The notes beneath the pieces were generated by a model, which was given only the letters and a program-made list of their open reading frames with translations, ran no database searches and had not been told where the DNA came from. This document shows positions 15,217-61,700 of a stretch of DNA of 64,000 nt, in pieces. The stretch's first letter is position 1. Every line of letters starts with the position of its first letter. The stretch comes from Rebecca billardiae RCC1528. Taxonomy: Eukaryota; Protista; Haptophyta. The stretch is taken from contig OZ251234.1 of the NCBI GenBank assembly GCA_965240325.2, forward strand, positions 372,001 through 436,000, written 5' to 3'. The position numbers and the translations under genes are program-made.

Positions 15217-15247
<31 letters not shown>

Positions 15248-16131: not shown

Positions 16132-16164
<33 letters not shown>

Positions 16165-18189: not shown

Positions 18190-18255
<66 letters not shown>

Positions 18256-24200: not shown

Positions 24201-25676
24201 GGCAACCACCCCGAGCTGGTGGTGATGACGGTGACGTCGGCGTGCGACGCGGCGACGCTGGACACGAACAGCCTCGCGGCCAACCTCGCCGCCGAGGACG
24301 GCGACGTCGACCTCGGCAGCCGGTACGGCCTGCAGTTCGAGCAGGACGGCGACACGCTCAAGGTGGAGGTGCGCGTGCACGCGGACGGCCAGCTCAAGAA
24401 CTTCCAGATCAACCTCGAGATCGACCCGTCGGTGTTCGTCGCGAGCGCGTGCGACCAGGGCGCCGACTGGAGCGGGCTGTGGTCGTGCACGCGCAACGAC
24501 CCGGTCGACGTCGTCACCATCGTGGGCAACAACGCCGACTCGACCAAGTCGGGCGACAACCTCGAGGTGGCGGTCGTCTACTTCACGGTGCAGTCGTCCG
24601 CGCAGTCGACGATCGGCGGCTCGATCCTCGAGCTGATCCAGTACGTGGGCGGCGTGGAGCAGCGCACGGTGGGCGGCACCGTCTTCGCGGGCGAGGGCGT
24701 CGCCGCCGTGAGCACGAGCCGCCGCCGCCGCCTCGCGGCCGTGCAGCGCCAGTCGGCGCAGCGGCTCGCCGCCGCGCGCGCCGCGCAGCCGCCGCGCCGC
24801 CGGCTGCAGTCGTCGATCACGACCGCGGACATCCAGTACCTCGTGTACGAGGAGTGGAACCTGGACGGCGACTGCGCGTCCAAGTGCGCCGTGCTGGGCG
24901 ACCTCAACGGCGACTGCTCCTTCTCGTCGTACGACGTCTTCGCCGGCTCGATCGTGCTCAGCGGCATCTCGCTCGGCGCGGTCACGTTCAGCGACCTGTG
25001 CCCGGCCATCCAGAGCCGGCTCGACCCCAACCTCGACTCTGCGTTCGGCCTCGCCGACATCCGGTACCTGCTGCTCACGGTCGGGCGCAAGCTGCACTTC
25101 GTGGTGGACGTGAGCGCGGACGCGTCCGACATGATCGCGGGCACGACGGGCGACCTCGTCTTCGCCGTCGCGCTGCGCAACTACGCGGGCGCGCCCGTGT
25201 CGACGCAGGCGGGCGTGCGCGCCGAGATCGCCTACCCCAAGAAGGACGGCGAGCCTGTGTACGCGCTGGGCGCGGGCGACGGGCGCACGCCGGCGAACAA
25301 CTGGCTGGCCGAGCTCGCGCTCTTCAACGCGTCGGCCGGCGTGTACGCGGTGCACGTGCACGCCGCGCCGTACTGGGTGTCCAGCCGCACGTTCGGCATC
25401 GCGTTCATGCTCGAGACGGTCGACGGCTCGGGCGGCACGGAGAGCGAGCGCAACCTCGCCTTCTTCGGCAGCAGCGCGTCGCCGTACGCGGAGCAGGGCT
25501 CGTCGTTCTCGCCGTTCACCACGGTGACGGTGGGCGGGCCGACGAACATCGCGCTGCCGCCGAGCCCGCCGCCGCCCACGCCGCCTCTGTCGCCGCCGCC
25601 GCCCTCCACGCCGCCGCCGCCGCCTCAGTCGCCGCCGCCCTCGCCGCCGCCGCCGCCGTCGCAGCCGCCGCCGCTC

Positions 25677-25709
<33 letters not shown>

Positions 25710-25755
25710 AGCCCGTCGCCGCCGTCGCCACCCAGCCCGCCGCCGCCGCCGCCCT

Positions 25756-25787
<32 letters not shown>

Positions 25788-28700
25788 ACGCCGCCGCGCC
25801 CGCCCACGCCGCCGCCGCCGCCGACCCCGCCGCTCACGTGCGTGCTGGGTGACGTGCTCGTGCAGGGCGTGCGCGCCGAGTTGAGCGCAGCCGCGACCGG
25901 CCCGGGCTTTGCGCTCGACGGCACCTACTCGTCGACCTCGCCGACGTTCACGCGGGACTTTGGGTTCTTCTACGCGTACCCGCCGCAGACGAGCGGCGCC
26001 ATCGCGGCGACGATCCAGGGCTACTCGTACCTGCGCCGCTCGCGCAGCTTCTCGATGGCGCGCAGCGAGGTGGCGAGCGTGAGCGCCGTCGTGCGCACGG
26101 CGACGCTCTACTCGGGCCGCAACAAGGTGCGCGTCGCGTACCAGGTGCGCGATGAGGCGGGCCGCACGGACGTGGAGACGGGCGGGCTGACGGTGCAGCT
26201 CGCGCTCGCGCACTCGAGCGGCTCGCCGACGAGCACCACGTCGTGCTCGTCGCCGTCGACGGGCGGCATCGGCCTGTGCTCGGTGACGCTGAACAGCGGA
26301 TGGTTCTCGACGAGCGCGGGCTCTGCCACGGTGACGGTGACGGCCAAGTACGGCAGCACGGTCGCCGCGACGCACGCCGTGGGCTCCGTCGCGCTGGCGG
26401 CGTCGCCGGCGCACGGCACGCTCTCGTCGGCGGGCATGCTCGCCACGATGGCGACGGCGCCGCTGTACCCGACCGACTCGTTCGAGGTGAGCTTCCGCGC
26501 GCACACGGGCGCGTTTGCGCTCAAGTCGTGGTCGGTGCTGCTGCAGTACGACGCCTCCGTGCTGCAGTACGGCGGCGCGACGGGCAGCGCGCTGTACGCC
26601 GCGCCCACCGTGAGCCACAACGAGGCGGAGGGCCTCCTCGACGTGACGGCGCTCGACACCGCGGGCGGCGTCTCCAACGCGGCCGTGACGGGCAGCGCGG
26701 TGCACGTGCTCACGCTCACGTTCAGCGTGCGCGCCACCGCGCTCACCAACACGACGCACGCCGGCGTGCTCTCCTTCGTCGTCTCGTCGATGATCAACGC
26801 GGGCAACATCGAGTACGCCGCCGACGTGGCTGGCGACGTGGCCGACGACCGCGACGGCCTGCAGACCTCGGGCCGCGTGTTCGTCGAGGCGGTCGCGGCG
26901 GTGGGCGCGCACGCGTACACGGACGTGGCCGAGGTGGTGAACACCGCGCCGCTCACTGGCGACGCGATCAGCGCGCAGGTGACCGTGCTCGAGCACTACA
27001 ACCGCGACTCCGTCTCGTCGAGCGAGGAGACGTCGGGCTACCGCTGCTCGACCACCGACACCGCCGTGCTCTCCGTCAGCTCGTCGAGCTGCGCGGTGAC
27101 GATCACGGGCGCTCACACCGGCGGCGCGGCCTCGGCGACGATCACCGTCGCGTCCGTGGACGGCGCCGTGGGCGCGCAGACGCCGATGCGCGTGTGGTAC
27201 CCGCTGAGCGCGACGATGAGCGTGTCGGACGACGAGCTGCAGCGCGTCGAGCTGCTGTCGAACACGGCGTCGTGCGGCTCGCCCGGCTACCAGAGCGCCG
27301 AGGTGAGCGTCGTCGCCGACTTTGGCGGCGCGTTGCTCACGACGGTGAGCGGCGTCGACGTGAGCGCGCTGGTGACGCTCGCCTCGTCCGACGCGGCCGT
27401 GCTCAGCGTGTCCGGCTCGACGATGACCGGCCTCGCCGACGGCGTGGCGAACGTGACGCTGGGTGGCGGCGCGACGCTCGGGCTCTACGAGGCCGTGGGC
27501 GTGAGCGACGAGTACGTCAGCGTCAACCTGACCGCCGTGGTCGTGTCCAAGCTCGCGTGGTCGCCGCAGCCGCCGGGCAGCGTCGACGCCGCGCACGGCG
27601 AGACGGTCACGGCGGGCGCGGAGCTCGCGCAGGAGCTCGAGCTCGAGGGTGACACGGCGGGCATCTACGCGTGGGCGACGTTCAGCGACGGCGCGACGTA
27701 CGCCGTGCCGCAGGCGCAGCTCTCGCTCGCCGCCGAGTCGAACAACCTCTTCCTCTCCACGCCGAGCAGCTCGGCGCCCTGGCGGCTCACCGTCGCGGAC
27801 GGCGCGCGCCGCGACTGCGGCGCGCTCGTGCGTGTCGAGTGGAACGTGTGCGGCGCGATGGTGGCGCTGGACTACCCGGAGGTGACGCTCAACCTGCCGG
27901 GCGCCACGTCCATGACCATCAAGCCCGCGCGCTCGCGGCTCACCTCGCCCGACGACGACGCGCGCATGGTGCCCGTCTCGATCGCCACGTGGAGCGCTCT
28001 CTCGGTCGACGTCGAGTACGAGACGGGCGACGTGGTCGACCTCACGGGCGACGCGCGGATCCGGCTGCGCGTGGCGGACGCGTCGGCGGGCTGCGCGGAG
28101 ATGACGAGCTCGTTCACCGTCGCCATCAAGGCGGGCGCGGCGTGCACCTCGATCGAGCTCGAGGGCAGCGCCATCGGCCTGGGCGTGTCCACGAGCGTCG
28201 TGATCCCTGTCGTGTACGTGCAGCACGCGTACCTGGGGCTCTCGCCCTACCCCACCTACTCGGGCTCGTCGAGCGTGGTGACGACGACGCTGCGCAAGAT
28301 CGACTGCACGGACTTCTACCAGCACGCGATCGCGATCGCGACCGTCGTCCTCACCGACGCGTCCGAGGTGCAGGTGACCGGGCAGAGCGCCTTCTCGTCG
28401 TCCGACTCGGCGCTCGTGAACGTCGACGAGCGCGAGATCGAGGGTCTCGCCGTGGGTGCGGTCAACATCACCGCGCTGTGGGCGTCGACGACGAGCCGGC
28501 CGTACGCGCTGTCGGTGTCGGACGACCCGGTGCTCGTCACCACCCTGCGCCTCAGCTTCGCCGGCCTCTCCGCCTCCACGCTCGTCGGGCCGGTCGGCAC
28601 GGAGCGCGCGACGCGCGTGCGCGTCGTGTTCGACGACGGCACCGAGTTCAGCAACTTCTTCACCAAGGTGGACTGGATCGTGCCGACGTCGGCGCTGCTC

Positions 28701-31700
28701 ACCTTCTCGAGCGACGCGCCGACGGCGGTCGGCGTCTCCACGGACGGCGTGCTCGCGCTGTACAACAACCACCCGACGCTCGTCTCGATCGCCGTCTTCA
28801 ACGCGTGCAACGCGGCCGTCTCGGACAGCAGCTCGCTCGCGGCCAACCTCGCCGCCGAGGAGCGCGACGTCGACCTCGGCCACCGCTTCGGGCTGCAGTT
28901 CGACCAGTTCGGGGACACGGTCGAGGTGAACGTGCGCATCAACGCCAACGGCGACCTCAAGAACTTCCAGCTCGACATCAAGTTCGACGACTCGGTCCTT
29001 CGCGCGAGCGAGTGCGACCAGGGCGCCGAGTGGCAGGGCCTGTGGTCGTGCACGCTCAACGACCCGACCGACACGGTCACGGTCGTGGGCAACGACGCCG
29101 AGTCGACGGTGTCGGGCGACGACGTGGAGGTGGCGATCATCTACCTCACCGTGCAGTCCACCGCGCTCACGCAGATCCGCGGCACCGTCGTCGAGCTCAT
29201 CCAGTACGTGGGCGACACCGAGGAGCGCATCACGGGCGAGGAGATCTTTGCGGGCAAGGGCAACGTGCAGGTCACGTTCAGCCGGCGCCGCGCGCTCGCC
29301 GAGGTGCAGGAGCGCGCGCGCCACCGGCGCGCAGCACGCATCGCGGCGGCGCCGCCACGCCGGCGCCTGCAGTCCTCCTTCTCCACCGCCGAGATCGTCG
29401 ACCTGGTGTACGAGGAGTGGAACATGGACGGCGACTGCGCGTCCAAGTGTGCCGTGCTCGGCGACCTGGACGGCGACTGCGTCTTCTCGTCGTACGACGT
29501 GTTCGCGGGCTCGATCGTGCTGAGCGGCATCTCGCTCGGCGTGGTGACGTTCGGCGACCTGTGCCCGACGATCCAGAGCCGGCTCAACCCGAACCTGGAC
29601 AGCGACTTTGGGCTGACCGACATCCGGTACCTGCTGCTCACGGTCGGGCGCAAGCTGCACTTTGTGACGGACGTGTCGTTCGACGCGAGCCGGATGTTCG
29701 CGGGGACGCAGAACGACCTTGCGGTCGCCGTGACGCTGCGCAACTACGCGGGCGAGCCAGTCTCGACGCAGACGGGCATGCGCGCGGAGATCGCGTACCT
29801 GGCGTCTGAGGGCACGCCCGAGTACAACATCGGCTCGTCGGACGGCACGTCGCCGGCTGGGTACTGGCTGTCCAACCTGGCGCTGACGAACGCTTCGGCG
29901 GGCGTGTACTCGGTGCACGTGCACCCGGACTCGTTCTGGCTGGCCAGCCGCGCCTTTGGCATTGCGGTCATGCTCGAGACCGTCGACGCCTCTGGCGGGA
30001 GCACGTCGGACCGCAACATCGCCTTCTTTGGCAGCAGCGCGTCGCCGTACTCGGAGCAGGGCTCGTCGTTCTCGCCGTACGGCAGCGTCAGCGTGGTTGG
30101 CAGCCTGCCGCCGTCCAGCCCTCCGACGCCGCCGCCGCCGAGCCCGCCATCGGAGCCGCCATCTTCGCCGCCTGGCGCGCCGCCCCCTCCGCCGCCATCG
30201 CCGCCGCCAAGCCCGCCGCCGTCGCGGCCACCGCCTCCACCGCCATCGCCCCCGCCGAGCCCACCTCCGTCGCCACCTCCGCCACCGCCACCAAGCCCGC
30301 CACCGAGCCCGCCGCCATCGCCGCCGCCGCCGCCGCCGCCGACGCCCCCTCCGCCCAGTCCGCCGCCGCCGCCACCGCCAGCACCGCCGCCGCCGCCGCC
30401 GCCGACGCCCCCACCGCCAGGGAGTCCGCCGAGCCCGCCGCCTTCGCCGCCGCCACCGCCTCCGACCCCTCCACCGCCCTCGCCCACTCCACCCTCGCTG
30501 CCGCCTCCACGACCCGCCCCTCCGCCATCGCAGCCGCCATCGTCACCGCCGGGCGCGCCCAGCTCACCGCCGCCGCTGTCGCCGCCGCCGGCGCCTCCTC
30601 GCCAGTGCGAGTATTCCGCGGACGACCTCGTGGCGGGCGCCTCCGCCGTGTTCGAGGCGAGCGCGTCGGGCCCGGGCTTTGCGCTCGACGGCACGTACTC
30701 GTCGACCAACCCGACCTTCTCGGAGGACTTTGGCTTCTTCTACGCGTACCCGCCGCAGACGAGCGGCCGCGTGACCGCGTCGATCCAGGGCTACTCGTAC
30801 CTCGAGCGCTCGCGCTCGTTCAAGATGAGCCGCAGCGAGGTGGCGAGCGTCAGTGCCGTCGTGCGCACGACGACGCTGCACGAGGGCGAGAACCGCAACC
30901 TGCTCCGCGTCGCGTACCAGGTGCGCGACGATGCGGGCCGCACGGACGTGGAGACGAGCGGGCTGACGGTGCAGGTGGAGCTTGCGCACTCGGCAGGCTC
31001 GCCGACAAGCACCACTTCGTGCTCGTCGCCGTCGACGGGCGGCATCGGCCTGTGCTCGGTGACGCTGAACAGCGGATGGTTCTCGACGAGCGCGGGCTCT
31101 GCCACGGTGACGGTGACGGCCAAGTACGGCAGCACGGTCGCCGCGACGCACGCCGTGGGCTCCGTCGCGCTGGCGGCGTCGCCGACGCACGGCACGCTCT
31201 CGTCGGCGGGCATGCTCGCCACGATGGTCTCGTCGCCGCAGTACCCGACCGACTCGTTCGACGTGGTGATCACCGCGCACGCGGGCGCCTTTGCGCTCAA
31301 GTCGTGGGAGCTCTTCCTGCAGTACGACACGTCTGTGCTCGAGTACCGCCAGCACACGGGCGGCTCGGACTACGCGACGCCGACGGTGAGTATCAGCACG
31401 GCGAACGGCGAGCTGAGCGCGTCGGCCCTCGACATCGTCACGACTGAGGGCGACGTGTCGGGCACGGACGTGTGGGTGCTCACCGTCCAGTTCCGTGTCG
31501 TGGGCTCTGCTGCCACGGGCGTGACGCATCCGGACGTGCTGTCGTTCAACGTGGTGTCGATGATCAACGCGGGGACGGTCGAGTACCTGGCTGACACTGC
31601 GGGCTTCGTGGCCGACGACCGTGACGGCCTGCAGTCGTCGGGCCATCTCGCCGTCGAGGCGGTCCTCGCGGTGGGCGCGCACGCGTACACGGACATCGTC

Positions 31701-34700
31701 GAGGTGGTGAACACCGCGCCGCTCACGGGCGATGCGATCAGCGCGCAGGTGAGCGTGCTCGAGCACTACAACCGCGCAGCGAAGGCATCCCTCGAGCAGA
31801 CGTCGTCGTACGCGTGCAGCACAACCTCGGCGACGGTGCTCTCGGTGGACGGCTCGACGTGCGCTGTGACGCTCTCGGGCGCGCACAGCGCGGGCGCGGC
31901 GTCGGCCGTGATCGACGTGGTCTCCGGCTCGCTGAGCGCGCAGACGCCGATGCGCGTGTGGTACCCGCTGAGCGCGACAATGAGCGTGTCGGACGCCGCT
32001 CTCGAGCGCGTCGAGCTGCTGCAGAGCGCGGCGTCGTGCGGCTCGCCGGGCTACCAGAGCGCCGAGGTGAGCGTCGTCGCCGACTTTGGCGGCGCGTCGC
32101 TCACGACGGTGAGCGGCGTCGACGTGAGCGCGGTGGTGACGCTCGTCTCGGGCGACAGCGGCGTGGTGACCGTCGACGGCTCGATGGTGACTGGCGTGGG
32201 CGCCGGCTCGACGAGCGTGTCGCTCGGAGGCGGCGCGACGTCGCCGGCGAGCGCGAGCGTGAGCGTGAGCGACGTTGTGCTGTCGGCCAACCTGACGGCG
32301 GTCGCCATCTCCGACTTCTCGTGGACGTCCGCGCCGCCGTCCAAGGTGCCGGCCACGCCTGCCACGTACTCGTTCACCACGGGCGCGCAGGTTGCGCAGG
32401 TGCTCGCACTGGAGGGCGACGAGGCGGGCGTGTACGGCTGGGCAACGTTCTCGGACGGCACACGGGCGAAGGTGCCGCCGGCGCAGCTGCAGCTCACGTC
32501 GCTCACGTCCAGCATCGAGCTGACGTCGGGCAGCTCATCGACGCCGTGGAAGCTCGAGGTGGCGACGGGCGCGGTGTACGGCTGCGGCAAGCTGCTGTAC
32601 GCCGAGTGGAGCGTGTGCGGCACCGTGGTCGCCGACACGCACGCGCTGGTCTTCCTCGACATGCCGCAGCCGTCTGGGCTGCGCGTGTCGTCCTCGCGCT
32701 CGTATCTGACCTCGCCGGACGATCCGGTGGCCTCGGCGCCCGTGTCGATCGCGTCGTCTGCCAGCCTCACTGTGATCGTCGACTACGAGACGGGCACATC
32801 TGCGGACTTCACGGGCGATGAGCGCGTGTCGGTGACGGTGGACGCTGGCTCGGCGAGCTGCGCGCAGATGTCGGCGTCGAGCACGGTGTCCATCGTGAGC
32901 GGCGCGACGTGCTCGTCGATCACCCTCTCGGTGAGCGCGTTTGGGCTGTCGACGACGCTGGAGATCCCGGTGGTGTACCTCGACTACATGTACGTGTTCG
33001 CGTCGCCGTACCCGTCGTTCAGCGGCTCGACGAGCATGGAGAAGACGACGCTGCGCCGCATCGACTGCACGGACGCGTACCAGCACGCGAGCACCGTGGC
33101 GATCGCGGTGATCACCGGCGGGTACCCCGACCAGGCGGTGACGTCGCACGCGCTGTTCACCTCGTCGAACAGCTCGGTGATCGAGATCGACGCCAACCTG
33201 TACACGCGGCTGCGCGGCACGAACGCGGGCGCGACGAACGTGACGGCCGCGTGGGCGGGCGCGACGAGCCTGGCGTACCCGATGGTCGTGTCGAACGAGC
33301 CGGTCCTGGTGACCCAGCTCACGCTGACGTTCCGCGGCCTGACGAGCAACACGCTGTACGGGTCTGTGGGCACTCGGCGCGAGGTGAAGGTGCGCGTCGA
33401 GTTTGACGACGGCACCGAGTTCCCCAACTTCATCACGCAGGTGGAGTCGGACTGGATCCCGACGTCGGACCTGCTGCTCTTCTCGAGCGACGCGACGAGT
33501 GCAGTCACCGTCGACACCGAGGGCGAGATGACGCTCCGGGGCAACCACTACGCGCTCGTGACGATGACGGTCACGTCGGCGTGCAACGCTGCGATGCTGG
33601 ACACGAGCCAGCTCGCCGCCAACCTCGCGGCGGAGGATGGCGACGTTGACCTGGGCAACATCTACGGCGTGCAGTTCGACCAGTTTGGCGACACGGTCGA
33701 GATCCTGGTGCGCATCCACTCGGGCGGCGACCTGAAGAACTTCCAGATCGACATCAAGTTCGACCCGTCGGTGTTTGTCGCGAGCGCGTGCAACCAGGGC
33801 GCCGACTGGGGCGGCCTCTGGTCGTGCACGCGCAACGACCCGGTCGACGTGGTGACGGTGGTGGGCAACGACGCGGAGTCGACGGCTTCGGGCACGGACG
33901 TGGAGGTTGCCGTGGTGTTCCTCACGGTGCAGGGCTCGACGCTGTCCGAGATCAGCGGCGAGGTCGTCGAGCTGATCCAGTACGTGGACGGCGTCGAGGT
34001 GCGCACCGGTCCAGAGGCCCTGTTCGCGGGCAACGGCTTTGTGTCGACGAGCGCGGGCGGCGCGCGCCGGCTCGCCGAGGTGCAGCAGCGCTCGCAGCGT
34101 CGGCAGCAGGCGCGCCTGGCGGCGATGCCGCCGCGCCGGCGTCTGCAGTCGTCCTTCTCCGAGTCGGACATCATCGACCTGGTGTACGAGGAGTGGAACA
34201 TGGACGGCGACTGCGCGTCCAAGTGCGCCGTGCTGGGCGACCTGGACGGCGACTGCGTCTTCTCGTCGTACGACGTGTTCGCGGGCTCGATCGTGCTGAG
34301 CGGCATCTCGCTCGGCGCGGTGACGTTCGGCGACCTGTGCCCGACGATCCAGAGCCGGCTCAACCCGAACCTGGACAGCGACTTTGGGCTGACCGACATC
34401 CGGTACCTGCTGCTCACGGTCGGGCGCAAGCTGCACTTTGTGACGGACGTGTCGTTCGACGCGAGCCAGATGTTCGCGGGGACGCAGAACGACCTTGCGG
34501 TCGCCGTGACGCTGCGCAACTACGCGGGCGACGCCGTCTCGACGCAGACGGGCATGCGCGCGGAGATCGCGTACCTGGCGTCTGAGGGCACGCCCGAGTA
34601 CGCCGCCGGCTCGTCGGACGGCACGTCGCCGGCTGGGTACTGGCTGTCCAACCTGGCGCTGACGGACGCGTCTGAGGGCGTGTACTCGGTGCACGTGCAC

Positions 34701-49700: not shown

Positions 49701-52700
49701 GTGCTGAGCGTCACCTTCAGCGTGCTCAACGCGGTGGCGACCGACGAGCTGTACAACGACGTCATCTCGCTCTTCGTCACGTCCATGGTGAACCAGGGCA
49801 CGACCGAGTTCGTGTCCGAGACCGCCGGCTCCGTGACGGATCTGCGCGACGGCGTGCAGACGGCGGGCCGGCTCGAGATCGAGGCGGTCGCGGCGGTGGG
49901 CGCGCACGCGTACACGGACGTGGCCGAGGTGGTGAACACCGCGCCGCTCACAGGCGACGCGCTTAGCGCGCAGGTCACCGTCGTCGAGCACTACAACCGC
50001 GCGGCCACCTCGTCGAGCGTCGAGACCTCTTCGTACGCGTGCAGCTCGACCGCCGCGACGGTGCTCTCGGTGGACGGCCCGAGCTGCGCGGTGACGATCT
50101 CGGCCGCGCACAGCGCGGGCGCGGCGTCGGCCGTGATCGACGTGGTCTCCGGCTCGCTGAGCGCGCAGACGCCGATGCGCGTGTGGTACCCGCTGAGCGC
50201 GACGATGAGCGTGTCGGACGCCGCTCTGGAGCGCGTCGAGCTGCTGCAGAGCGCGTCGTCGTGCGGCTCGCCCGGCTACCAGAGCGCCGAGGTGAGCGTC
50301 GTCGCCGACTTTGGCGGCGCGTCGCTCACGACGGTGAGCAACGTCGACGTGAGTTCGCTGGTGACGCTCGTCTCGGGCGACAGCGGCGTGGCGACCGTCG
50401 GCGGCTCGATGGTGACGGGCGTGGGTGCCGGCTCGACGAGCGTGACGCTCGGCGGCGGCGCGACGTCGCCGGCGAGCGCGAGCGTGAGCGTGAGCGACGT
50501 GGTACTGACGGCCAACCTGACGGCGGTCGCCATCTCGACGCTCTCGTGGTCGACGACGCCGCCGTCCACAATCTCGGCCGCGCACGGCACCACGTTCACC
50601 GCGGGCGCGGAGCTGGCGCAGTCGCTGACGCAGGAGGGCGACGAGGCGGGCGTGTACGCGTGGGCGAGCTTCTCGGACGGCACGACCGCGCGGGTGCCCG
50701 CGACGCAGCTGCAGGTGTCCACGACCTCGACCGGCATCGAGCTCACGTCGGGCGACTCGTCCACGCCGTGGACGATGGCGGTCGCCACCGGCGCCATCGT
50801 CGAGTGCGGCGAGCTGCTGGCCGTCGAGTGGACGGTGTGCTCGACGACCGTGGCGAGCGACACGGCGTACGTGCACCTCGACATGCCCGCGCCAGAGTCG
50901 GTGACGGCCACATCGGCGCGGTCACGGCTGACGACGCCGGACGACCCCGCCGCCGTGTCGCCCGTCTCCGTGAAGACGAGCTCGCAGATCGCGGTGAGCG
51001 TCCGCTTCGAGAACGGCGTCGACGTCTCCTTCTCGAGCGACAGCCGCGTGCGCATCACCGTGGACAGCGCGTCGGAGTCGTGCGCGTGGATCCGCAGCCA
51101 GTTCACGGTCGTCATGTACGAGGGCTCGGCGTGCACGCAGGTCGACCTGACGGTCAGCGTGCTCGGCGTGAGCACGAGCCTGAGCATCCCGGTCGTCTAC
51201 CTCGACCGCTTCTTCGTCTTCGCGTCGCCCTACCCGTCGTTCAGCGGCTCGACCGAGGTGGAGAAGTCGACGCTGCGCAAGATCGACTGCACGGACGCGT
51301 ACCAGCACGCGAGCGCCGTCGCGATCGCGCGCCTCACCGACGCGACGGAGACGTTTGTCACGTCTGCGGCCTCGTTCTCGTCGAGCAACAGCTCGGTGGT
51401 TCGCGTGGACGGCACGCGGCTGATGGGCGAGAACGTTGGCGCGACCGACGTGACGGCCAGCTGGGCGAGCATCGTGAGCGACGTGTACGCGATGGCCGTG
51501 TCGAACGACCCTGTCGTCATCACCTCGCTCATCCTCAACTTTGCCGGCCTGACGCAGGGCACGCTGATTGGCGCGGCGGGCACGCAGCGCGACATGAAGG
51601 TGCGCGTCATGTTCGACGACGGCACCGAGTTCAGCAACTTCCTCACCAAGGTCGAGTCGTGGTGGATCCCGACGTCCGACCTGCTGCTCTTCTCGAGCGG
51701 CGCGACCTCGGCCATCACCACCTCCGCAGAGGGCGTGATGACGCTGGTCGACAACCACTACGAGGAGGTGACGATGACGGTCACGTCGGCGTGCGCCGCG
51801 GCGATGCTCGACACAAACACGCTCGCCGCCAACCTCGCGCCGGAGGACGGCGACGTCGACCTGGGCAACCAGTACGGCGCGCCGTTCGTGCAGGACGGCG
51901 ACACGGTCGCCGTCGAGGTGCGCGTCCGCGCCGACGGCGAGCTCAAGAACTACCAGGTCGACCTCGAGTTTGACGACTCGGTCCTGCGCGCGAGCGAGTG
52001 CGACCAGGGCGCCGACTGGGGCGGGCTCTTCTCGTGCACGCTCAACGACCCGTCCGACAAGGTCACGGTCGTGGGCAACGACGCCGACTCGACCGCGTCG
52101 GGCTCCGACCTGCACGTCGCGACCGTCTACTTCACGGTGCAGTCGTCCGCGCAGTCCGCCATCTCCGGCACGGTGCTCGAGCTCATCCAGTTTGTGAGCG
52201 GCGCGGAGGTGCGCACGGGGCCGTTCGCGCTCGTCGCCGGCGACGGCCCGATCCTGGTGCAGCAGACGACCCGGCTGCGCCGCCTCAGCGCCGTGCGCGA
52301 GGAGCGCGCGCAGCGCGACGCGGAGCGGCGCGCACTCGCGCCCGCACCCGCCGAGCGCCGCCGCCTCCAGTCCTCGTTCTCCACCGCCGAGATCGAGGAG
52401 CTCGTGTACACGGAGTGGAGCCTCGACAGCGGCTGCGCGTCCAAGTGCGACGTGGAGGGCGACATCGACGGCGACTGCGAGTTCTCGTCGTACGACGTGT
52501 TCGCCGCGTCGATCGTGTTCAGCGGCATCGCGCTCGACGTCGTCGAGTTCGGCGCGCTGTGCTCCAACATCCAGGGCCGCCTCGACGCCAACCTCGACGG
52601 CGAGCTCGGGCTGACCGACCTCAAGTACCTGCTGCTGGTCGTGAGCCGCAAGCTGCACTTCGTGACCGCCGTCACCACCACCTCGAGCAACGTGATCGCC

Positions 52701-55700
52701 GGCTCGACGGGCAACCTCGCCTTGGCCATCACGCTGCGCAACTACGCGGGCGAGGCGGTGACGACGCAGGCGGCCATGCGCGCGGAGATCAGCTACCTCG
52801 CGACGGAGGGCACTGCCGTCTACACGCTCGGCTCGTCGGACGGCACGTCGCCGGACGGGTACTGGCTCGCCAACCTCGCGCACGCTGGCAACGGCGTGTA
52901 CTCGCTGCTGGTGCACCCGCTGCCGTACTGGGTGAGCGGCCGGCTCTTCGGGATCGCGTTCATGCTCGAGACGACCGACAGCTCGGGCGGCACCGAGAGC
53001 GAGCGCAACTTCGCCTTCTTTGGCAGCAGCGCGCCGCCGTACTCGGAGACGGGCTCGTCGTTCAGCCCGTACAAGTACATTGCCGTCACCGGCCCGACCG
53101 TCCTGCTGCCGCCGCTGCCGCCGCCGTCTCCGCCGCCGCAGCCGCCACCCTCGCCGCCGCCGCGGCCGCCGCCGCCTTCCCCCCCGCCGAGCTCACCGCC
53201 GCCCTCGTCGCCGCCCGCGTCGCCGCCACCGCCGCCTCCGCCCTCGCCGCCGCCCGTGACGTGCCGCGGCGCCGCCGCGCTCGTCGAGGGTGCAACGGCC
53301 GTGTTCGAGGCGAGCGCGTCGGGCCCGGGCTTTGCGCTCGACGGCACGTACTCGTCGACCAACCCGACCTTCTCGGAGGACTTTGGCTTCTTCTACGCGT
53401 ACCCGCCGCAGACGAACGGCCGCGTGACCGCGTCAATCCAGGGCTACTCGTACCTCGAGCGCTCGCGCACCTTCAAGATGAGCCGCAGCGAGGTGGCGAG
53501 CGTGAGCGTCGTCGTGCGCACGGACACGGTGTACGAGGACCGCAACGCCGTGCGCGTCGCGTACCAGGTGCGCGACGACGCGGGCCGCACGGACGTGGAC
53601 ACCAGCGGGCTGACGGTGCAGCTCGCGCTCGCGCACTCGAGCGGCTCGCCCACGAGCACCACGTCGTGCTCGTCGCCGTCGACGGGCGGCATCGGCCTGT
53701 GCTCGGTGTCGCTGGGCAGCGAGTGGTTCTCGACGAGCGCGGGCTCGGCCACGGTGACCGTCACTGCCAAGTACGGCAGCACGGTCGCCGCGAGCGAGGC
53801 GGGCAGCGCCGTCACGCTGGCGGCCTCGCCGACGCACGGCACGCTGTCGGCGGCGGGCATGCTCGCGACGATGGTCTCCGCCCCGCAGTACCCCGGCGAC
53901 ACCGTCACCGTCGAGATCAGCGCGCACACCGGCGAGTTTGCGCTCGGCTCGTGGTTCCTGCTGGCGCAGTTCGACACGTCGGTGCTCGAGTTCGCGAGCT
54001 CGACGGGCAGCGACCTGTACGCGTCGCCGCAGGTGGTGGTGGACCTCGAGAACGGCCGGCTCACGGGGCAGGCGCTGTCGCTCAACGACGGCGTCGCTAG
54101 CGCCGAAGTGACCGGCTCGGCCGTCCCCCTGCTCACGCTCAGCTTCACGGTGCGAAGCGTCTCGGCCGGCACGTACGCCGACGCCATCTCGCTGTCCATC
54201 GACTCGATGGCCAACACCGGCGGGAACACGTACGTGCAGGACCAGGCGGGCTTCGTGGCCGACGATCGCGACGGCCTGCAGTCGTCTGGCCGCCTCGCCG
54301 TCGAGGCGGTCGCCGCGGTGGGCGCGCACGCGTACACGGACATCGTCGAGGTGGTGAACACCGCGCCGCTCACGGGCGATGCGATCAGCGCGCAGGTGAG
54401 CGTGCTCGAGCACTACAACCGCGCGTCCACGTCGTCGAGCGTGGAGACCTCGTCCTACCTGTGCAGCTCGGCGGACGACACCGTCGTCACCGCCGACTTT
54501 GGCACGTGCGCGCTCTCGCTCACGGCTTCGCACCTCGCCGGCGCTGCCTCGGTCGCCATCACCGCCTCCGGGCCGTCGGCGCTGAGCGCGCAGACGCCGA
54601 TGCGCGTGTGGTACCCGCTGAGCGCGACGATGAGCGTGTCGGACGGCGAGCTGCAGCGCGTCGACCTGCTGCAGAGCGCGTCGTCGTGCGGCTCGCCGGG
54701 CTACCAGAGCGCCGAGGTGAGCGTCGTCGCCGACTTTGGCGGCGCGTCGCTGGCGACGGTGAGCAGCGTCGACGTGAGCGCGCTGGTGACGCTCGTCTCG
54801 GGCGACAGCGGCGTGGCGACCGTCGACGGCTCGATGGTGACGGGCGTGGGCGCCGGCTCGACGAGCGTGACGCTCGGCGGCGGCGCAACGTCGCCGGCGA
54901 GCGCCAGCGTGAGCGTGAGCGACGTGGTGCTGACGGCCAACCTGACGGCGGTCGCCATCTCGACGCTCTCGTGGTCGACGACGCCGCCGACGAGTGTGCC
55001 TGCCACGCCTGCCACGTACTCGTTCACCGCGGGCGCTGAGCTGGCGCAGTCGCTGACGCAGGAGGGCGACGAGGCGGGCGTGTACGCGTGGGCGAGCTTC
55101 TCGGACGGCACGACGGCCAAGGTCTCCCCGGCGCAGCTGCAGGTCACCACGAGCTCGTCCGGCGTCGAGCTGACGTCGGGCGACTCGTCCACGCCGTGGA
55201 AGCTGGCGGTCGCGTCCGGCGCGCTGCCCGAGTGCCGCGAGATGCTCGAGGTCGAGTGGACGGTGTGCTCGGCGACGGTGGCGCGCGACACGGCGTACGT
55301 GCACCTCGACATGCCGGGCGCCGAGTCGCTCACCGCCACCTCCGTCGAGTCGCGCCTCACCTCGCCCGACGACCCCGCGCGCGTGGCGCCCGTGTCGGTC
55401 GCGACGTCGTCGGCCATCCGCGTCGAGGTGCGCTTTGAGAACGGCAACACGCAGACGATGACCGGCGACAGCCGCGTCGAGATCTCGGTGACGAGCCCGA
55501 CGTCGTGCGCGACGATGAGCGGCTCGTTCGAGGTGTCGATCACCAACGGCGCGAGCTGCGAGACCGTCGAGCTCGCCGTCTCGATCCCCACGTTTGGCGT
55601 GAGCGGCACGCTGAGCGTCCCCGTCGTGTACCTGGATCGCTTCTTCCTCACCGCCTCGCCGCACCCGACCTACTCGGGCTCGACGAGCGTGGTGAAGTCG

Positions 55701-58700
55701 ACGCTGCACAAGGTCGACTGCACGGACGCGTACCAGCACGCGCAGGCGGCGGCGACCGCGCTGCTCACCGACGCCACCTCCGTCGCGGTGACGAGCAAGG
55801 CGGCGTTCAGCTCGACCAACTCGTCGGTGGTGGACGTGGACGGCACGCGCCTGATGGGCGTGCGCCCCGGCACCGTCGGCGTCACCGCGCGCTGGGCGAG
55901 CATCGACAGCGAGATGTACGTGCTGTCGGTCTCGGACGTGCCGGTGGTCATCACGGCGCTGCAGCTCCAGTTCGCCAGCCTCGATCGCGACGACACGCTG
56001 CTCGGCGTCGCGGGCACGCAGCGCACCGTCAAGGTGCGCGTCGAGTTTGACGACGGCACCGTCTTCACCAACTTCATCACCAAGGTCGAGTCGTGGTGGA
56101 TCCCGACGTCCGACCTGCTGCTCTTCTCGAGCGGCGCGGCCTCGGCCGTCACCGTCTCGACCGAGGGCATGATGACGCTGCTCGACAACCACTTCGAGCT
56201 CGTGACGATGACGGTCACGTCGGCGTGCGACGCGGCGATGCTCGACGCAAACACGCTCGCCGCCAACCTCGCGCCCGCCGACTTCGACGTCGACCTGGGC
56301 AGCCAGTACGGCGTGCAGTTCCAGCAGGAGGGCGACACGCTCGAGGTCGCGCTGCGCATGCACTCGGACGGCGAGCTCAAGAACTTCCAGATCGATGTCG
56401 AGTTCGACGACGCGGTAGTGCTCGCGCAGTCGTACGTGCAGGGCGCCGACTGGGGCGGACAGTTCTCGTGCACGCTCAACGACCCGAGCAACAAGGTCAC
56501 GTGCATCGGCAACGACGCTGAGTCGACGGCGTCCGGCTCGGACCTCGAGCTGGCGGTCATCCAGTTCACGGCGCAGTCGACGGCGCACGTCACGTTCTCC
56601 GCGTCGATCATCGACGCGCTGCAGTTCGTGGGCGGCGTCGAGACGCGCCTCACCGACGCGACCGCTGTCGCCGGCCGCGGCGTGGCCGCGCTCACGCTCA
56701 GCCGGCTGCGCCGGCTCGCCGAGGTGCGCGCCAAGACGCAGCGCCGGACGGCCGCGCGGCGGCATGCGCGCGCGCACAACAACCGGCGCCGGCTGCAGAC
56801 CTCGTTCACCACCGAGGACATCGAGGACTTCGTGTACACAGAGTGGAGCCTCGACAGCGGCTGCGACGCCAAGTGCGACGTGCTCGGCGACCTGAACAAC
56901 GACTGCGTCTTCACGTCGTACGACGTGTTCGCCGCGTCGATCGTGTTCAGCGGCGTCGCGCTCGACGTGGTCAACCTCGGCGGCCTCTGCGCCAACATCC
57001 AGAGCCGGCTCGACCCGACGCTCGACGGCGACTTTGGCCTCTCCGACCTGACGTACCTGCTGCTCACGGTCGGGCGCAAGCGCCACTTTGTGACCAACGT
57101 GACCGTCGACTCGACCGCCGTGGTCGCAGGCACCCAGGGCAACGTCGAGCTCGCGCTCACGCTGGTGAACGCGGAGGGCGGCGCCGTCACGACGCAGGCG
57201 AGCGTGCGCTCCGAGATCAGCTACGACCAGAGCGAGGGCACCGCCCTCTTCGACGAGGGCACCGACGGCGGCACGTCGCCGGACGGCGGCTGGCTCGGCG
57301 TGCTCGATCACGTCGGCGCGGGCCGGTACTCGATGAAGGTGCACCCCGATCCGTTCTGGCTGACGGCGCGCACGTTCGGCATCGCGTTCATGCTCGAGAC
57401 GACCGACAGCTCGGGCAACTCGGACGACGACCGCAAGTACCCGTTCTTCGGCTCGAGCGTCGAGACGTACGCCGCGCAGGGCTTCACGTTCTCGCCGTTC
57501 GCCGAGCTGGCTGTCTCCGGCTTCTCCAACCTGACGCTGCCGCCGTCGCCGCCGCCGCTGCCGTCGCCGCCGCCGCCGCCGTCGTCGCCGCCACCGGACG
57601 TGCCCTCGCCGCCGCCCAAGCCGCCGCCGCGTCAGCCGCCACCGCCGAGTGCGCCGCCGCCGCCGCCGCCGGCACCGTCGCCAAGCCCGCCGCCCGCGCC
57701 GCCCGCGCAGCCGTCGCCGCCGCCGGGCCTGCCGTCGCCACCGCCGCCGCCGCCAAAGGTGTGCCCGACGACTGCGGAGCTGCTCAACGGCGCCTCCGCC
57801 ATGTTCGAGGCGAGCGCGTCGGGCCCGGGCTTCCCGCTCGACGGCACGTACTCGTCGACCAACCCGACCTTCTCGGAGGACTTTGGCTTCTTCTACGCGT
57901 ACGCGCCGCAGACGAGCGGCCGCGTGACCGCGTCGATCCAGGGCTACTCGTACCTCGAGCGCTCGCGCACGTTCACGATGAGCCGCAGCGAGGTGGCGAG
58001 CGTGAGCGTCGTCGTGCGCACGGACACGGTGTACGAGGACCGCAACGCGGTGCGCGTCGCGTACCAGGTGCGCGACGACGCGGGCCGCACGGACGTGGAC
58101 ACGAGCGGGCTGACGGTGCAGCTCGCGCTCGCGCACTCGAGCGGCTCGCCCACGAGCACCACGTCGTGCTCGTCGCCGTCGACGGGCGGCGTCGGCCTGT
58201 GCTCGGTGTCGCTGGGCAGCGAGTGGTTCTCGACGAGCGCGGGCTCGGCCACGGTGACCGTGTCGGCCAAGTACGGCAGCACGGTCGCCGCGAGCGAGAC
58301 GGGGGCCGCCATCACGCTGGACGCCTCGCCGGCGCACGGCACGCTGACGGCGGCGGGCATGCTCGCGACCACGGTCTCCTCGCCGCGCTTCCCGGGCGAC
58401 ACGTTCGACGTGAGGATCACCGCGCACACGGGCGGCTTCTCCATGCTGTTCTGGGGCATCACCGCGCAGTACGACACGTCGGTGCTCGAGTACGAGGGCG
58501 CGACCCAGAGCAGCCTGTACAACTCGCCGAGCGTCGGCGTCGACAGCGGCGCCGGCCTGATCAGCGCGTCCGTGCTCGACATCGCGGGCGGTGTGGACGA
58601 GGCGGACGTGCTGGGCACGGCCGTGCACGTGATCACGCTGAGCTTCCGCGTGGCCTCGGGCGCGCCGACCGGCGCGGTGCACGCCGACGTGCTCGCGCTC

Positions 58701-61700
58701 ACCGTGGACAACATGAACAACCAGGACCGCTCGTACGTGACCAACCAGGTTGGCTCGCTGCTCGACGACCGCGACGGGCTGCAGACGTCCGCGCGCCTGG
58801 CCGTGGAGGCGGAGGCGGTGGTGGGCGCGCACGCGTACACGGACGTGGCCGAGGTGGTGAACACCGCGCCGCTCACGGGCGACGCGCTCAGCGCGCAGGT
58901 CAGCGTGCTCGAGCACTACAACCGCGCGTCCACCTCGTCGGGCGAGGCGGCCACCTCCTCGTACACGTGCGCCACTGTCGCCAGCGCCGTGCTCTCGGTC
59001 GGCGCGTCGAGCTGCGCCGTGACGATCTCGGCCGCGCACAGCGCGGGCTCGGCGTCCGCCAGCATCGACGTCACCTCGGTGGACACCGCCGTGGTCGCGC
59101 AGACGCCGATGCGCGTGTGGTACCCGCTGAGCGCGACGATGAGCGTGTCGGACGCCGCTCTGGAGCGCGTCGACCTGCTGCAGAGCGCGTCGTCGTGCGG
59201 CTCGCCGGGCTACCAGAGCGCCGAGGTGAGCGTCGTCGCCGACTTTGGCGGCGCGTCGCTCACGACGGTGAGCGGCGTCGACGTGAGTTCGCTGGTGACG
59301 CTCGTCTCGGGCGACAGCGGCGTGGCGACCGTCGACGGCTCGATGGTGACGGGCGTGGGCGCCGGCTCGACGAGCGTGTCGCTCGGCGGCGGCGCGACGT
59401 CGCCGGCGAGCGTGGGCGTGAGCGTGAGCGACGTGGTGCTGACGGCCAACCTGACCGTCGTCGCCATCTCGACGCTCTCGTGGTCGACGACGCCGCCGTC
59501 CACGGTCTCGGCCGCGCACGGCACCACGTTCACCGCGGCCGCGGACGTGGCGCAGGTGCTCGAGCTCGAGGGCGACGAGGCGGGCGTGTACGGCTGGGCG
59601 AGCTTCTCGGACGGCACGACCGCGCGGGTGCCCGCGACGCAGCTGCAGCTCACGTCGCTCACGTCCGGCATCGAGCTGACGTCGGGCGACGCGTCGACGC
59701 CGTGGAAGATGGCGGTCGCCACCGGCGCCGCCTTCGAGTGCGGCGACCTGCTCTCCGCGTCGTGGAGCGTGTGCGGCGTCGTGGTGGCCGAGGACCTGGT
59801 GCCCGTGCTGCTCGACCGGCCGGGCGCGAGCGGCCTCAGCCTCGCGTCGTCGCGCTCGCGGCTCACCTCGCCGAGCGACCCCGCGGCCGCGACGCCGGTG
59901 TCCGTCTCGACGAGCGCGGAGATCACCGTGCTCGTCCAGTTCGAGACCGGCGACTCGCAGGACTTCAGCTCGGACGAGCGCGTGACGGTGGAGGTGCTCA
60001 ACCCGCTGTGCGCGACGCTCGAGTCGGGCACGGCCAAGCCGACCGTGCGCGTCAAGTTCACGCTCGACGTGGCCGCGTGCACGAGCGTGGAGGTGCGCGT
60101 CGCCGTGCCGTCGCTCGCGGTCTCGGAGACGCTCTCCGTGCCCATCGTGTACCTCGACGAGCTGTACGTCGGCGTCTCGCCGTACCCGGCGTACTCGAGC
60201 CCGGACTCGTCGACGTACGTGGTGAGCAGTCTGAACAAGATCGAGTGCACCGGCTACTACCAGCACGGCAAGGCGAGCGCGACCGCGCGGCTCACGGACG
60301 GCGACGAGATCTCGGTCACGTCGTTCGCGACGTTCGCCTCGACCGACTCGGCGGTCGTCCTCGTCGAGGCGCCCACGCGGCTGCGCGGCGAGAGCGCCGG
60401 GCTCGTCGACGTCACCGCGACGTGGGCGTCGACCGTGTCGACGCCGTACGCGCTCGAGGTCTCTGACACGCTCGTGCTCGTGACCGACCTCATCCTCACC
60501 TTCCAGGGGCTCACGCGCGGCACGCTGTACGGCGAGGTGGGGCACAGCCGCTCGGTGCGCGTCAAGGTGATCTTCTCCGACGGCACGCGCTTCTCCAACT
60601 TCCTCACCGACGTCGACTGGATCCCGACGAGCGAGCTGCTCACCTTCGCCACGAGCGCGCCCGCCGCCGTCTCGATCTCGACCGAGGGCGTGATGACGCT
60701 GCTCGGCAACCACCACGAGGCGGTGGGCGTGCAGGTGAGCAAGGCGTGCGACGGCTCGCAGGAGATGACGAACGAGCTCTTCGCCAACCTCAAGCCCGCC
60801 AACGGCGACGTCGACCTCGGCCACCAGTACGGCCTGCAGTTCTCGCAGGACTCGGACGGCACGTTTGAGGTCGCTGTGCGCGTGCACGCCGACGGCCTGC
60901 TCAACAACTTCCAGATCGACGTGTACATCGACCCCGCCGTGTTCCACGTCGCGTCGGAGGACGACTGCGAGCAGGGCGCGGACTGGGGCGGCATCTTCTC
61001 CTGCACGCCCAACGACCCAACCGACGTGGTCACCGTCGTGGGCAACGACGCCGAGTCGTCCGCGACGGGCGAGGCGATCGAGGTGGCGGTGATCAAGCTC
61101 ACGCCCAAGACATCGGCGCGCTCGACCATCTCCGCGCTCATCATCGACCTGGTGCAGACGAGCAGCGGCGTGGAGCAGCGGCTGAGCAACGTCGACGTGT
61201 TCGCCGGGCTGGGCGACGCGCTCGCCGTCGTCGACCGCCGCCGCGCGCGCCAGCTCTCCGCAGCGAACGTGCTCGCCGCCGCGGACGCGCGCGCCGCGCG
61301 CCGCGCGGCCGCCGCCGCCGCCGCCGCCGCGCGCGCCGCCAACCGGCGCGCGCTGCAGACGGCCTCGTTCACGTCCGCGCAGATCGTCGAGCTGGTGTAC
61401 GAGACGTGGGACCTGGACGACGAGGCGAACGGCAACTGCGACGCCAAGTGCGACGTGCTCGGCGACCTGGACGGCGACTGCGTCTTCACGTCGTACGACG
61501 TGTTCGCGGGCTCGATGGTGTACACGGGCATCCAGCTGGGCGTGGTCACGTGGAACGACCTCTGCCTCAACGTGCGGCAGCGGCTCAACGTCAACCTGGA
61601 CACGTCCTTCTCGCTGACCGACCTGCGCTACCTGCTGCTCGTCGTCGGGCGCAAGCTGCACTTCATCACCAGTGTCGAGTCGGACGACAGCGCGTGCGTC

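What the first reader, a model, noticed from the sequence alone, without database searches (positions are those of the whole stretch)
24720..61358. Paired RRL...RRRLQ sites would excise a basic helical spacer peptide from every repeat
Seen: paired sites at 24720-24809, 29283-29372, 34065-34148, 38616-38699, 43206-43289, 47763-47849, 52272-52370, 56703-56798 and 61236-61358 (e.g. RRLAEVQQRSQRRQQARLAAMPPRRRLQ). The spacer sequence varies, but both boundaries and the Arg/Ala/Gln-rich composition are kept. Known: R-X-L/RRL motifs mark precursor processing in diatom wall proteins (silaffins, silacidins). Inference: removing a 25-40 aa cationic spacer could act as a maturation switch that prevents premature docking, or could release nine cationic peptides.
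Basis: partly seen in the sequence, partly recalled or inferred. Interest (0 to 1): 0.75.

Follow-up and report, generated by a model that had tools for sequence, protein, structure and literature searches.

The report
Paired cut-site linkers, cohesin to dockerin
In a 20,133-residue surface protein of a haptophyte-type alga, each of nine repeats has two arginine-rich motifs around a short variable spacer between a "socket" (cohesin) and a "plug" (dockerin) domain. Relatives from other algae and from choanoflagellates keep both motifs in the same places, so they are probably protease cut sites, but no cutting has been shown.

Summary
All nine paired sites lie at the stated coordinates in one open frame (2076-62477, +).

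What the evidence shows:
- **Position.** Each pair sits between the second cohesin and a dockerin-like module. AlphaFold places both sites outside the folds, and site B lies in a pLDDT<50 loop.
- **Conservation.** The pairing holds across the family. Of 156 cohesin-to-dockerin linkers from 118 representative relatives, 105 have a dibasic cluster 9-13 residues after the cohesin plus a second cluster at least 8 residues on. Shuffled linkers give a mean of 6.2.
- **Lineage dialects.** The algal clade (haptophytes, green algae, this window) uses RR-x-L. The choanoflagellate/cadherin clade uses the furin consensus R-X-K/R-R.
- **Spacer.** Its length, charge and helicity are not conserved.

Best reading (about 0.55): these are processing sites that remove a disposable connecting peptide and cut the polyprotein into roughly 1,500-residue dockerin-to-cohesin modules.

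The protease is unknown.

This scan had already noted the same linker in paralogues on other pieces of this genome (s1-338776, s1-355066). I found no published description.

The parts
2076..62477 (+). Giant open reading frame of 20,133 codons. It encodes a secreted multi-domain protein with nine units of about 1,500 residues and no C-terminal membrane anchor.
   Evidence: Pfam finds Cohesin and Ig_TMEM132_4th in each unit.
24720..24809 (+). Linker 1: site A (RRRRL) at 24720-24734, spacer, site B (RRRLQ) at 24795-24809.
29283..29372 (+). Linker 2: site A (RRRAL) at 29283-29297, spacer, site B (RRRLQ) at 29358-29372. This is the unit that was modelled.
   Evidence: AlphaFold puts site A in coil after the last cohesin strand and site B in a loop with pLDDT<50.
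34065..34148 (+). Linker 3: site A (RRL) at 34065-34073, site B (RRRLQ) at 34134-34148.
38616..38699 (+). Linker 4: site A (RRL) at 38616-38624, site B (RRRLQ) at 38685-38699.
43206..43289 (+). Linker 5: site A (RRL) at 43206-43214, site B (RRRLQ) at 43275-43289.
47763..47849 (+). Linker 6: site A (RRL) at 47763-47771, site B (RRRLQ) at 47835-47849.
52272..52370 (+). Linker 7: site A (RLRRL) ending at 52286, site B (RRRLQ) at 52356-52370.
56703..56798 (+). Linker 8: site A (RLRRL) ending at 56717, site B (RRRLQ) at 56784-56798.
61236..61358 (+). Linker 9: site A (RRRARQL) at 61236-61256, a longer Ala-rich spacer, site B (RRALQ) at 61344-61358.
28866..29273 (+). Second cohesin of unit 2, given as the example of the module upstream of each linker.
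   Evidence: Pfam Cohesin scores 27.4 bits against a cut-off of 24.1. Foldseek's top hits are bacterial cohesins.
29436..29657 (+). Dockerin-like module of unit 2, given as the example of the module downstream of each linker. It has two Asp-rich calcium-loop repeats, each followed by a helix.
   Evidence: Alignment A2. A profile search of the PDB gives weak hits (best E 0.009), and 15 of 17 are dockerins. Pfam alone gives no match.
2433..2444 (+). RRRL motif about 45 residues after the hydrophobic signal-peptide core, a possible N-terminal propeptide boundary.
5127..5177 (+). A tenth, short pair (RRRQL, seven residues, then RRRLQ) flanked by acidic and glycine-rich runs. It lies outside any cohesin/dockerin context.

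Best explanation
The two arginine-rich motifs are endoproteolytic processing sites at the ends of an exposed, poorly ordered connecting peptide. This peptide joins the second cohesin of one unit to the dockerin of the next.

Proposed course of events:
1. In the secretory pathway, a protease that reads basic residues followed by Leu cuts at both sites. It could be RXL-type, RXXL/RXLX-type or RRL-type in algae, and is a furin-type convertase in the choanoflagellate/cadherin relatives.
2. A disposable peptide of 24-33 residues is lost.
3. The 20,133-residue precursor becomes one N-terminal piece of about 7,550 residues, eight modules of 1,450-1,570 residues that each start with a dockerin and end with a cohesin, and a 373-residue tail.
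4. The modules can then stay joined, or join anew, through non-covalent cohesin-dockerin contacts.

Shown here: the motifs, their position outside the folds, their conservation and their lineage dialects. Inferred: that they are cut, that both are cut, and what the pieces do afterwards.
For: **Position**
- Site A lies 4-8 residues after the last cohesin strand.
- Site B lies in a pLDDT<50 loop just before the dockerin. This holds in two models, one of this gene and one of a paralogue.

**Selection on the boundaries only**
- The Arg codons vary synonymously between units while the residues are kept.
- Paralogues at 33-40% identity keep both motifs around unrelated spacers of 20-70 residues.
- Site B identity is 0.61, against about 0.3 in the flanking domains and 0.12 in the spacer.

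**Family-wide pattern**
- 902 relatives were found at E<=0.001.
- In 156 linkers, the first dibasic cluster lies at offset 9-13 in 123.
- Two separated clusters occur in 122.
- Both features occur in 105, against a shuffle mean of 6.2 and maximum of 14.

**Lineage dialects**
Clustering on the flanking domains alone separates two clades.
- The choanoflagellate/cadherin clade has R-X-K/R-R at site B in 47 of 64 linkers, never followed by Leu.
- The haptophyte/green-alga clade has RxL at site A in 66 of 92, and a basic run followed by Leu at site B in 53 of 92.
- This is what sites that track the local processing protease would look like.

**Precedents and context**
- RXL removal in diatom precursors (PMC4557024).
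- RXXL/RXLX sites of S1P-type subtilases (PMC4983112).
- RRL cleavage by the Golgi aspartyl protease ASP5 (PMC4764566).
- The same RRRL/RRRLQ motif also occurs after the signal peptide and as a short pair at aa 1018-1034.
- Candidate enzymes exist in this genome: a pepsin-type protease with both D[TS]G motifs and a C-terminal hydrophobic anchor, and at least 38 subtilase loci.
Against: - There is no proteomic or biochemical evidence of cleavage in any member.
- No canonical kexin/furin (S8 plus P domain) was seen in this genome. The single weak P-domain hit is not next to an S8 domain.
- RXL processing is documented in diatoms, not in haptophytes or green algae, and I found no paper on it.
- RR is not depleted in the repeat bodies: 13 observed against 12.2 expected.
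- RRRLQ-coding DNA is only 1.5 times more common genome-wide than the reversed pattern.
- About a third of family linkers lack one of the two features. The 156 linkers are not phylogenetically independent.
- A linker of 25-50 residues is, by my estimate, long enough for the neighbouring cohesin and dockerin to bind without any cut. The cut is therefore not obviously needed for docking.
Confidence: 0.55

Rival explanations
1. The linker is not cut. It is a flexible basic tether or hinge between cohesin and dockerin, and its arginine clusters bind an anionic partner such as acidic or sulfated polysaccharide of the cell covering, or an acidic patch on a neighbouring domain.
For: - In this gene the spacers are strongly cationic (net +3 to +9).
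- AlphaFold draws a helix starting at site A in both models.
- No cleavage has been shown, and no canonical kexin was found.
Against: - Only the boundaries are conserved. Family-wide, the interior net charge is zero or negative in 47% of linkers and the length ranges from 10 to 44 residues or more.
- The motif changes to the furin consensus in the choanoflagellate/cadherin clade. A generic charge tether does not predict this.
Confidence: 0.2
2. The sites are cut in order to release nine cationic peptides that have an activity of their own, for example antimicrobial, mineral-binding or polyanion-binding.
For: The excised peptides of this gene would be 24-33 residues long with net charge +3 to +9. 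Paired basic sites release active peptides from many precursors (established knowledge of prohormone processing).
Against: - The spacer interior is the least conserved part: identity 0.12 to paralogues.
- Paralogues carry Pro-rich or neutral spacers.
- Family-wide, charge and length are not kept. A peptide with its own function should be conserved.
Confidence: 0.07
3. Only one of the two sites is used. A single cut gives two chains that stay together non-covalently, as in furin-cut Notch or FAT cadherins. The second basic cluster is a backup or a trimming signal.
For: - Site A is position-locked (offset 9-13 in 123 of 156), whereas the distance of site B from the dockerin varies.
- In the algal clade, about 20% of linkers lack a second cluster.
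Against: - In this gene and its paralogues both sites are kept in nearly every copy.
- Here site B is the more conserved of the two.
Confidence: 0.13
4. The motifs have no function. They are a by-product of Arg/Ala-rich low-complexity sequence in a 70% G+C genome, copied nine times by tandem duplication.
For: The genome is very G+C rich. The units are homologous copies, three of them 90-94% identical.
Against: - Synonymous codon turnover with the residues conserved.
- Conservation in paralogues and in relatives from other phyla, at fixed positions, far above shuffles.
Confidence: 0.03

Closest known systems
RXL processing of diatom wall-protein precursors (silaffins, cingulins, silacidins, frustulins)
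   Same: R-X-L or RRxL motifs lie at the ends of repeat units and after the signal peptide of secreted precursors, and the motif is absent from the mature pieces (PMC4557024). All 18 sites here contain R-X-L.
   Different: The lineage is different (haptophyte, not diatom), and the protease is unknown in both. Here the repeats are folded modules of about 1,500 residues rather than short peptides. The sites come in pairs that would discard a spacer.
Paired basic sites around a discarded connecting peptide (proinsulin C-peptide type; proprotein convertases)
   Same: Two basic motifs flank a variable spacer, and the two flanking parts could stay associated after the cuts. The choanoflagellate/cadherin relatives carry the furin consensus R-X-K/R-R at the same positions.
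   Different: In the window the basic run is followed by Leu, and the strict furin consensus is mostly not met. No S8 plus P-domain convertase was detected in this genome. Association here would be by cohesin-dockerin contact, not by disulfides.
S1P/SBT6.1-type subtilase sites (RXXL, RXLX) and TEXEL/PEXEL sites (RRL, RxLxE/Q/D) cut by Golgi/ER aspartyl proteases
   Same: Every site B fits RXXL. Site A fits RXXL or RXLX, and RRLAE at site A of five units also fits RxLxE (PMC4983112, PMC4764566). A membrane-anchored pepsin-type protease and many subtilases are encoded in the genome.
   Different: No orthology of any enzyme was established. PEXEL sites lie near the N-terminus, whereas these sites are internal and repeated.
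Polyproteins cut into repeat monomers with loss of a linker (profilaggrin; nematode polyprotein allergens)
   Same: Many tandem units are separated by short linkers bounded by protease sites (established knowledge, not checked in papers here).
   Different: Those are intracellular or lipid-binding units without mutual docking domains. Here each predicted monomer carries a plug at one end and a socket at the other.
Coherin/lefftyrin/hedgling cadherins and animal TMEM132 (TMEM132-type cassette with cohesin)
   Same: The same cassette is present: Ig_TMEM132_4th plus Cohesin. The paper describing it notes cohesins in choanoflagellate and sponge cadherins (PMC6030884).
   Different: That paper mentions no cleavage sites and found no dockerin in vertebrates. 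The window's protein has no cadherin repeats and no membrane anchor.

Membership tests
Diatom-type RXL processing site | An R-X-L motif at the boundary of repeat units of a secreted precursor | tested here: met
   R-X-L is present at all 9 A sites and all 9 B sites, and after the signal peptide.
Diatom-type RXL processing site | The motif and the following or preceding segment are absent from the mature protein | not testable with these tools
   This needs terminomics or peptide sequencing of the mature protein.
Diatom-type RXL processing site | RXL processing is documented in the organism's lineage | tested here: not met
   The literature search found RXL processing described for diatoms only, and none for haptophytes.
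Furin/kexin (proprotein convertase) site | R-X-K/R-R or K/R-R motif in an exposed segment of a secretory protein | tested here: inconclusive
   A dibasic RR is present at all 18 sites and is exposed in the models. The strict R-X-K/R-R consensus is met only in part of the window's sites. It is met at site B in 47 of 64 linkers of the choanoflagellate/cadherin clade.
Furin/kexin (proprotein convertase) site | A convertase with an S8 catalytic domain plus a P domain encoded by the organism | tested here: not met
   There is one weak P-domain hit (28.9 bits) on contig 37, with no S8 hit on that contig and no Pfam match in the surrounding frame. At least 38 S8 loci lie elsewhere. The search works exon by exon, so absence is not proven.
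S1P-type subtilase site (RXXL / RXLX) | Arg at P4 with Leu at P1, or the R-X-L-X form | tested here: met
   Site B is RRRL or RRAL in 9 of 9 units. Site A is RRRL or RRAL in units 1-2, and RRLA or RRLS (the RXLX form) in units 3-8. The consensus is taken from PMC4983112.
S1P-type subtilase site (RXXL / RXLX) | An S1P orthologue is present | not tested
   Seven S8 frames were scanned and showed only the Peptidase_S8 domain. No orthology analysis was done.
Cohesin-dockerin pair | Cohesin fold and sequence family | tested here: met
   Pfam Cohesin scores 27.4 bits against a cut-off of 24.1. Foldseek's top hits are cohesins at probability 1.00.
Cohesin-dockerin pair | Dockerin: two calcium-loop-plus-helix repeats | tested here: inconclusive
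   Two Asp-rich loops with invariant Asp and Gly, each followed by a helix. Profile hits to the PDB are weak (best E 0.009), but 15 of 17 are dockerins. Pfam gives no match.
Cohesin-dockerin pair | Calcium-dependent binding of the two modules | not testable with these tools
   This needs binding assays, or a two-chain structure prediction with contact output.

The most novel reading that the evidence does not exclude
Eukaryotic cohesin-dockerin pairs are made as single-chain precursors and licensed by excision of a connecting peptide. This arrangement would be older than the split between the algal and the choanoflagellate/animal lineages. Each lineage has retuned the two cut sites to its own secretory protease: RR-x-L in algae and R-X-K/R-R in holozoans. 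In this alga, the result would be a 2-MDa polyprotein that is cut into about ten plug-and-socket modules, which then self-assemble non-covalently into the cell covering.
Probability: 0.3. Interest if true: 0.8.

Novelty: new variant of a known kind. Interest (0 to 1): 0.58.

Why it matters
Cohesin-dockerin is the strongest known protein "plug and socket" in bacteria. Its role in eukaryotes, in TMEM132-type cassettes and coherin-type cadherins, is unknown.

[quoted passage not shown] The sites are retuned between algae and choanoflagellates.

It also extends RXL-like processing signals beyond diatoms to haptophytes and green algae. That narrows the search for the still unidentified RXL protease, using candidates encoded in this genome.

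Tried and rejected
- **Word-index protein search.** A search with the 375-residue segment found nothing, because of its length filter. The full HMMER search then found 902 relatives.
- **Genome-wide count of RRRLQ-coding DNA.** 1,321 matches against 865 for the reversed pattern. The frame is unknown and repeats are included, so the result is too weak to use.
- **Test for avoidance of RR or RxL inside the repeat bodies.** No significant depletion was found, so it says nothing either way.
- **Neighbouring "silaffin-like RRL cassette" noted by the scan.** I fetched it. ORFs in this G+C-rich DNA were uninterpretable without more work, so I dropped it.
- **Canonical kexin.** Not found.
- **Pfam on the dockerin alone.** No match. 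Only the profile search against the PDB gave weak dockerin hits.
- **Literature.** Searches for cleavage in coherins or TMEM132, and for RXL motifs in haptophytes, found nothing relevant.
- **Cis docking in the models.** The structure tool returns no coordinates or contact map, so I could not see whether the modelled dockerin touches the cohesin.
Full report
**What is there**

The window (G000 contig 17, 372001-436000) comes from a 72-Mb eukaryotic genome. It has eukaryotic 18S genes, and earlier scan notes call it a haptophyte-type alga. The closest named relative of this protein is from Pavlovales sp. CCMP2436.

One uninterrupted frame, 2076-62477 on the + strand, encodes 20,133 residues. 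It begins with a hydrophobic signal-like segment and ends without a membrane anchor. The last 14,000 residues are nine units of about 1,500 residues. Their DNA identity is 72-94%, and the middle three are the most alike. Each unit carries Pfam Cohesin and Ig_TMEM132_4th.

**The observation**

- Site A is RR(x)L followed by A/S-E/A-V.
- Site B is RRRLQ(S/T), or RRALQT in unit 9.
- Between them lie 19-28 residues rich in Arg, Ala and Gln, whose sequence varies.

The Arg codons at both sites differ synonymously between units while the residues stay the same. In the repeat part, RR(x)L occurs only in these linkers, with none in about 13,800 residues of unit bodies. Shuffling predicts only 1.8 there, so this alone is not significant.

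The same motif also occurs in three other places:
- about 45 residues after the signal segment (RRRL, nt 2433);
- in an acidic loop (RRRLQ, nt 2736);
- as a short pair, RRRQL then seven residues then RRRLQ, at nt 5127-5177.

**Where the pair sits**

- Upstream is a genuine cohesin. Pfam scores it 27.4 bits against a cut-off of 24.1, and Foldseek's top hits are all bacterial or archaeal cohesins.
- Downstream is a module with two Asp-rich loop-plus-helix repeats. Its profile finds only weak PDB matches, but 15 of 17 are dockerins. Pfam alone does not recognise it.
- In the AlphaFold model of unit 2 (mean pLDDT 85), the last cohesin strand ends at residue 152. Site A (156-160) is in coil. The spacer is drawn as a helix of falling confidence (71 to 54). 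Site B (181-185) is in a loop with pLDDT below 50.
- In a model of a paralogue, only a short helix follows site A. The next 22 residues, including site B, are below pLDDT 50.

Both sites are therefore outside the folds and likely accessible. The "helical" character is weak and not general.

**Is it more than inheritance by duplication?**

The genome holds at least ten other giant frames (2,500-23,000 codons) with the same cohesin-linker-dockerin segment at 33-40% identity. They keep R-R-x-L after the cohesin and R-R-L before the dockerin. The spacer between is unrelated in sequence and is 20-70 residues long. Identity between units and paralogues is 0.61 at site B, about 0.3 in the cohesin and dockerin, and 0.12 in the spacer interior.

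A profile search of 1.84 billion representative proteins found 902 relatives at E<=0.001. From the best 150 I extracted 160 cohesin-to-dockerin segments in 118 proteins, giving 156 distinct linkers. The counts are:

| Feature | Observed (of 156) | Shuffled linkers |
|---|---|---|
| First dibasic cluster 9-13 residues after the conserved cohesin Gly | 123 | mean 13.4 |
| Second dibasic cluster at least 8 residues further on | 122 | mean 37.7 |
| Both features | 105 | mean 6.2, maximum 14 |

The linkers are not phylogenetically independent, so the shuffle comparison is not a probability.

The spacer interior has a median length of 20 residues (5th-95th percentile 10-44). Its median net charge is +1, and it is zero or negative in 47% of linkers.

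**Lineage dialects**

Clustering the segments on the flanking domains alone, with linker columns excluded, gives two main groups.

| Group | Named members | Site A | Site B |
|---|---|---|---|
| 64 segments, 29 proteins | Choanoflagellates Monosiga and Salpingoeca; cadherin-plus-TMEM132-type proteins | R-X-K/R-R in 37 of 64 | R-X-K/R-R in 47 of 64, never followed by Leu |
| 92 segments | The window; haptophytes Prymnesium and Pavlovales; green algae Cymbomonas and Mesostigma | RxL in 66 of 92 | Basic run followed by Leu in 53 of 92 |

The position is conserved while the motif type follows the lineage. In the holozoan group the motif is the well-known furin consensus. This is the strongest argument that the motifs are read by the local secretory protease, rather than serving as a charge patch.

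**Mechanism proposed**

The two sites bound a disposable connecting peptide. Cutting after Leu at both would remove 24-33 residues per linker. The products would be:
- one N-terminal piece of 7,553 residues;
- eight modules of 1,450-1,568 residues that start with a dockerin and end with a cohesin;
- a 373-residue tail.

Such modules could remain joined, or polymerise, through cohesin-dockerin contacts.

The cut register and the enzyme are open. The sites fit three known types:
- the diatom RXL type (PMC4557024);
- the RXXL/RXLX type of S1P-like subtilases (PMC4983112);
- the RRL/RxLxE type of Golgi and ER aspartyl proteases (PMC4764566).

The genome encodes a pepsin-type protease with both catalytic motifs and a C-terminal hydrophobic anchor, and at least 38 subtilase loci. 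No canonical S8-plus-P-domain convertase was seen.

Everything after "the motifs are conserved, exposed and lineage-tuned" is inference. No cleavage has been observed in any member.

- Processing at RRL-type sites is supported as the best reading.
- Release of nine functional cationic peptides is unlikely, because the spacer is the least conserved part and is not cationic family-wide.
- A switch that prevents premature docking cannot be judged here. By my estimate a tether of 25-50 residues would not obviously prevent binding in cis.

**Comparison with what is known**

The closest known systems are:
- diatom RXL precursors;
- paired basic sites around a discarded connecting peptide;
- furin-cut adhesion receptors whose halves stay together non-covalently;
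- linker-excising polyproteins.

The TMEM132 paper describes the cohesin-Ig cassette in animals, choanoflagellates and sponges. It mentions neither cleavage sites nor a eukaryotic dockerin partner (PMC6030884). Searches for coherin or lefftyrin with furin, and for RXL in haptophytes, found nothing. The library lacks most subscription journals, so this is not proof of novelty.

This scan had already noted the same linker in paralogues elsewhere in this genome (s1-338776, s1-355066) and the unit architecture on this window (s1-336794). I re-tested their claims independently and agree with them.

**Verdict**

The feature is a new variant of a known kind of signal (paired processing sites) in a new and conserved context, and it awaits a direct test of cleavage.

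Noticed in passing
window 2433-2444, 2610-2750 and 5127-5177: RRRL lies about 45 residues after the signal segment. Two acidic or Gly-rich loop insertions also carry RRRLQ, one of them as a short RRRQL...RRRLQ pair. They sit inside N-terminal domains whose sister copies further on lack the insertion.
   Followed up: partly
window 11899-16370 and 19365-21282: Very long Pro/Ser-rich tracts (CCG-type repeats, G+C up to 90%) lie inside the same reading frame, hydroxyproline-rich-glycoprotein style.
   Followed up: no
G000 contigs 1, 16, 19, 21, 22, 24, 30 (loci L017-L030): At least ten other giant open frames (2,500-23,000 codons) carry the same cohesin-linker-dockerin segment. The 23,065-codon frame on contig 30 carries at least four copies.
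   Followed up: partly
G000:C12:478224-490751 (L048, L049, L050, L052): Four tandem subtilase genes each show one in-frame TGA inside the S8 domain match. This could be an intron, selenocysteine or a shared defect.
   Followed up: no
G000:C1:529503-530504 (L039): A pepsin-type aspartyl protease with TAXi_N/TAXi_C signatures, both D[TS]G motifs and a strongly hydrophobic C-terminal segment. By my recollection this is the topology of plasmepsin V/ASP5/BACE-type enzymes.
   Followed up: partly
protein P0146: A relative in the choanoflagellate/cadherin clade is labelled in NCBI as coming from a Rhodobacteraceae metagenome bin. It is probably a eukaryotic contig that was mis-binned.
   Followed up: no
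window 18888-18899: A single RRAL lies in a Gly-rich stretch (aa 5605) between the two proline-rich tracts. It is the only other RR(x)L in the protein.
   Followed up: no
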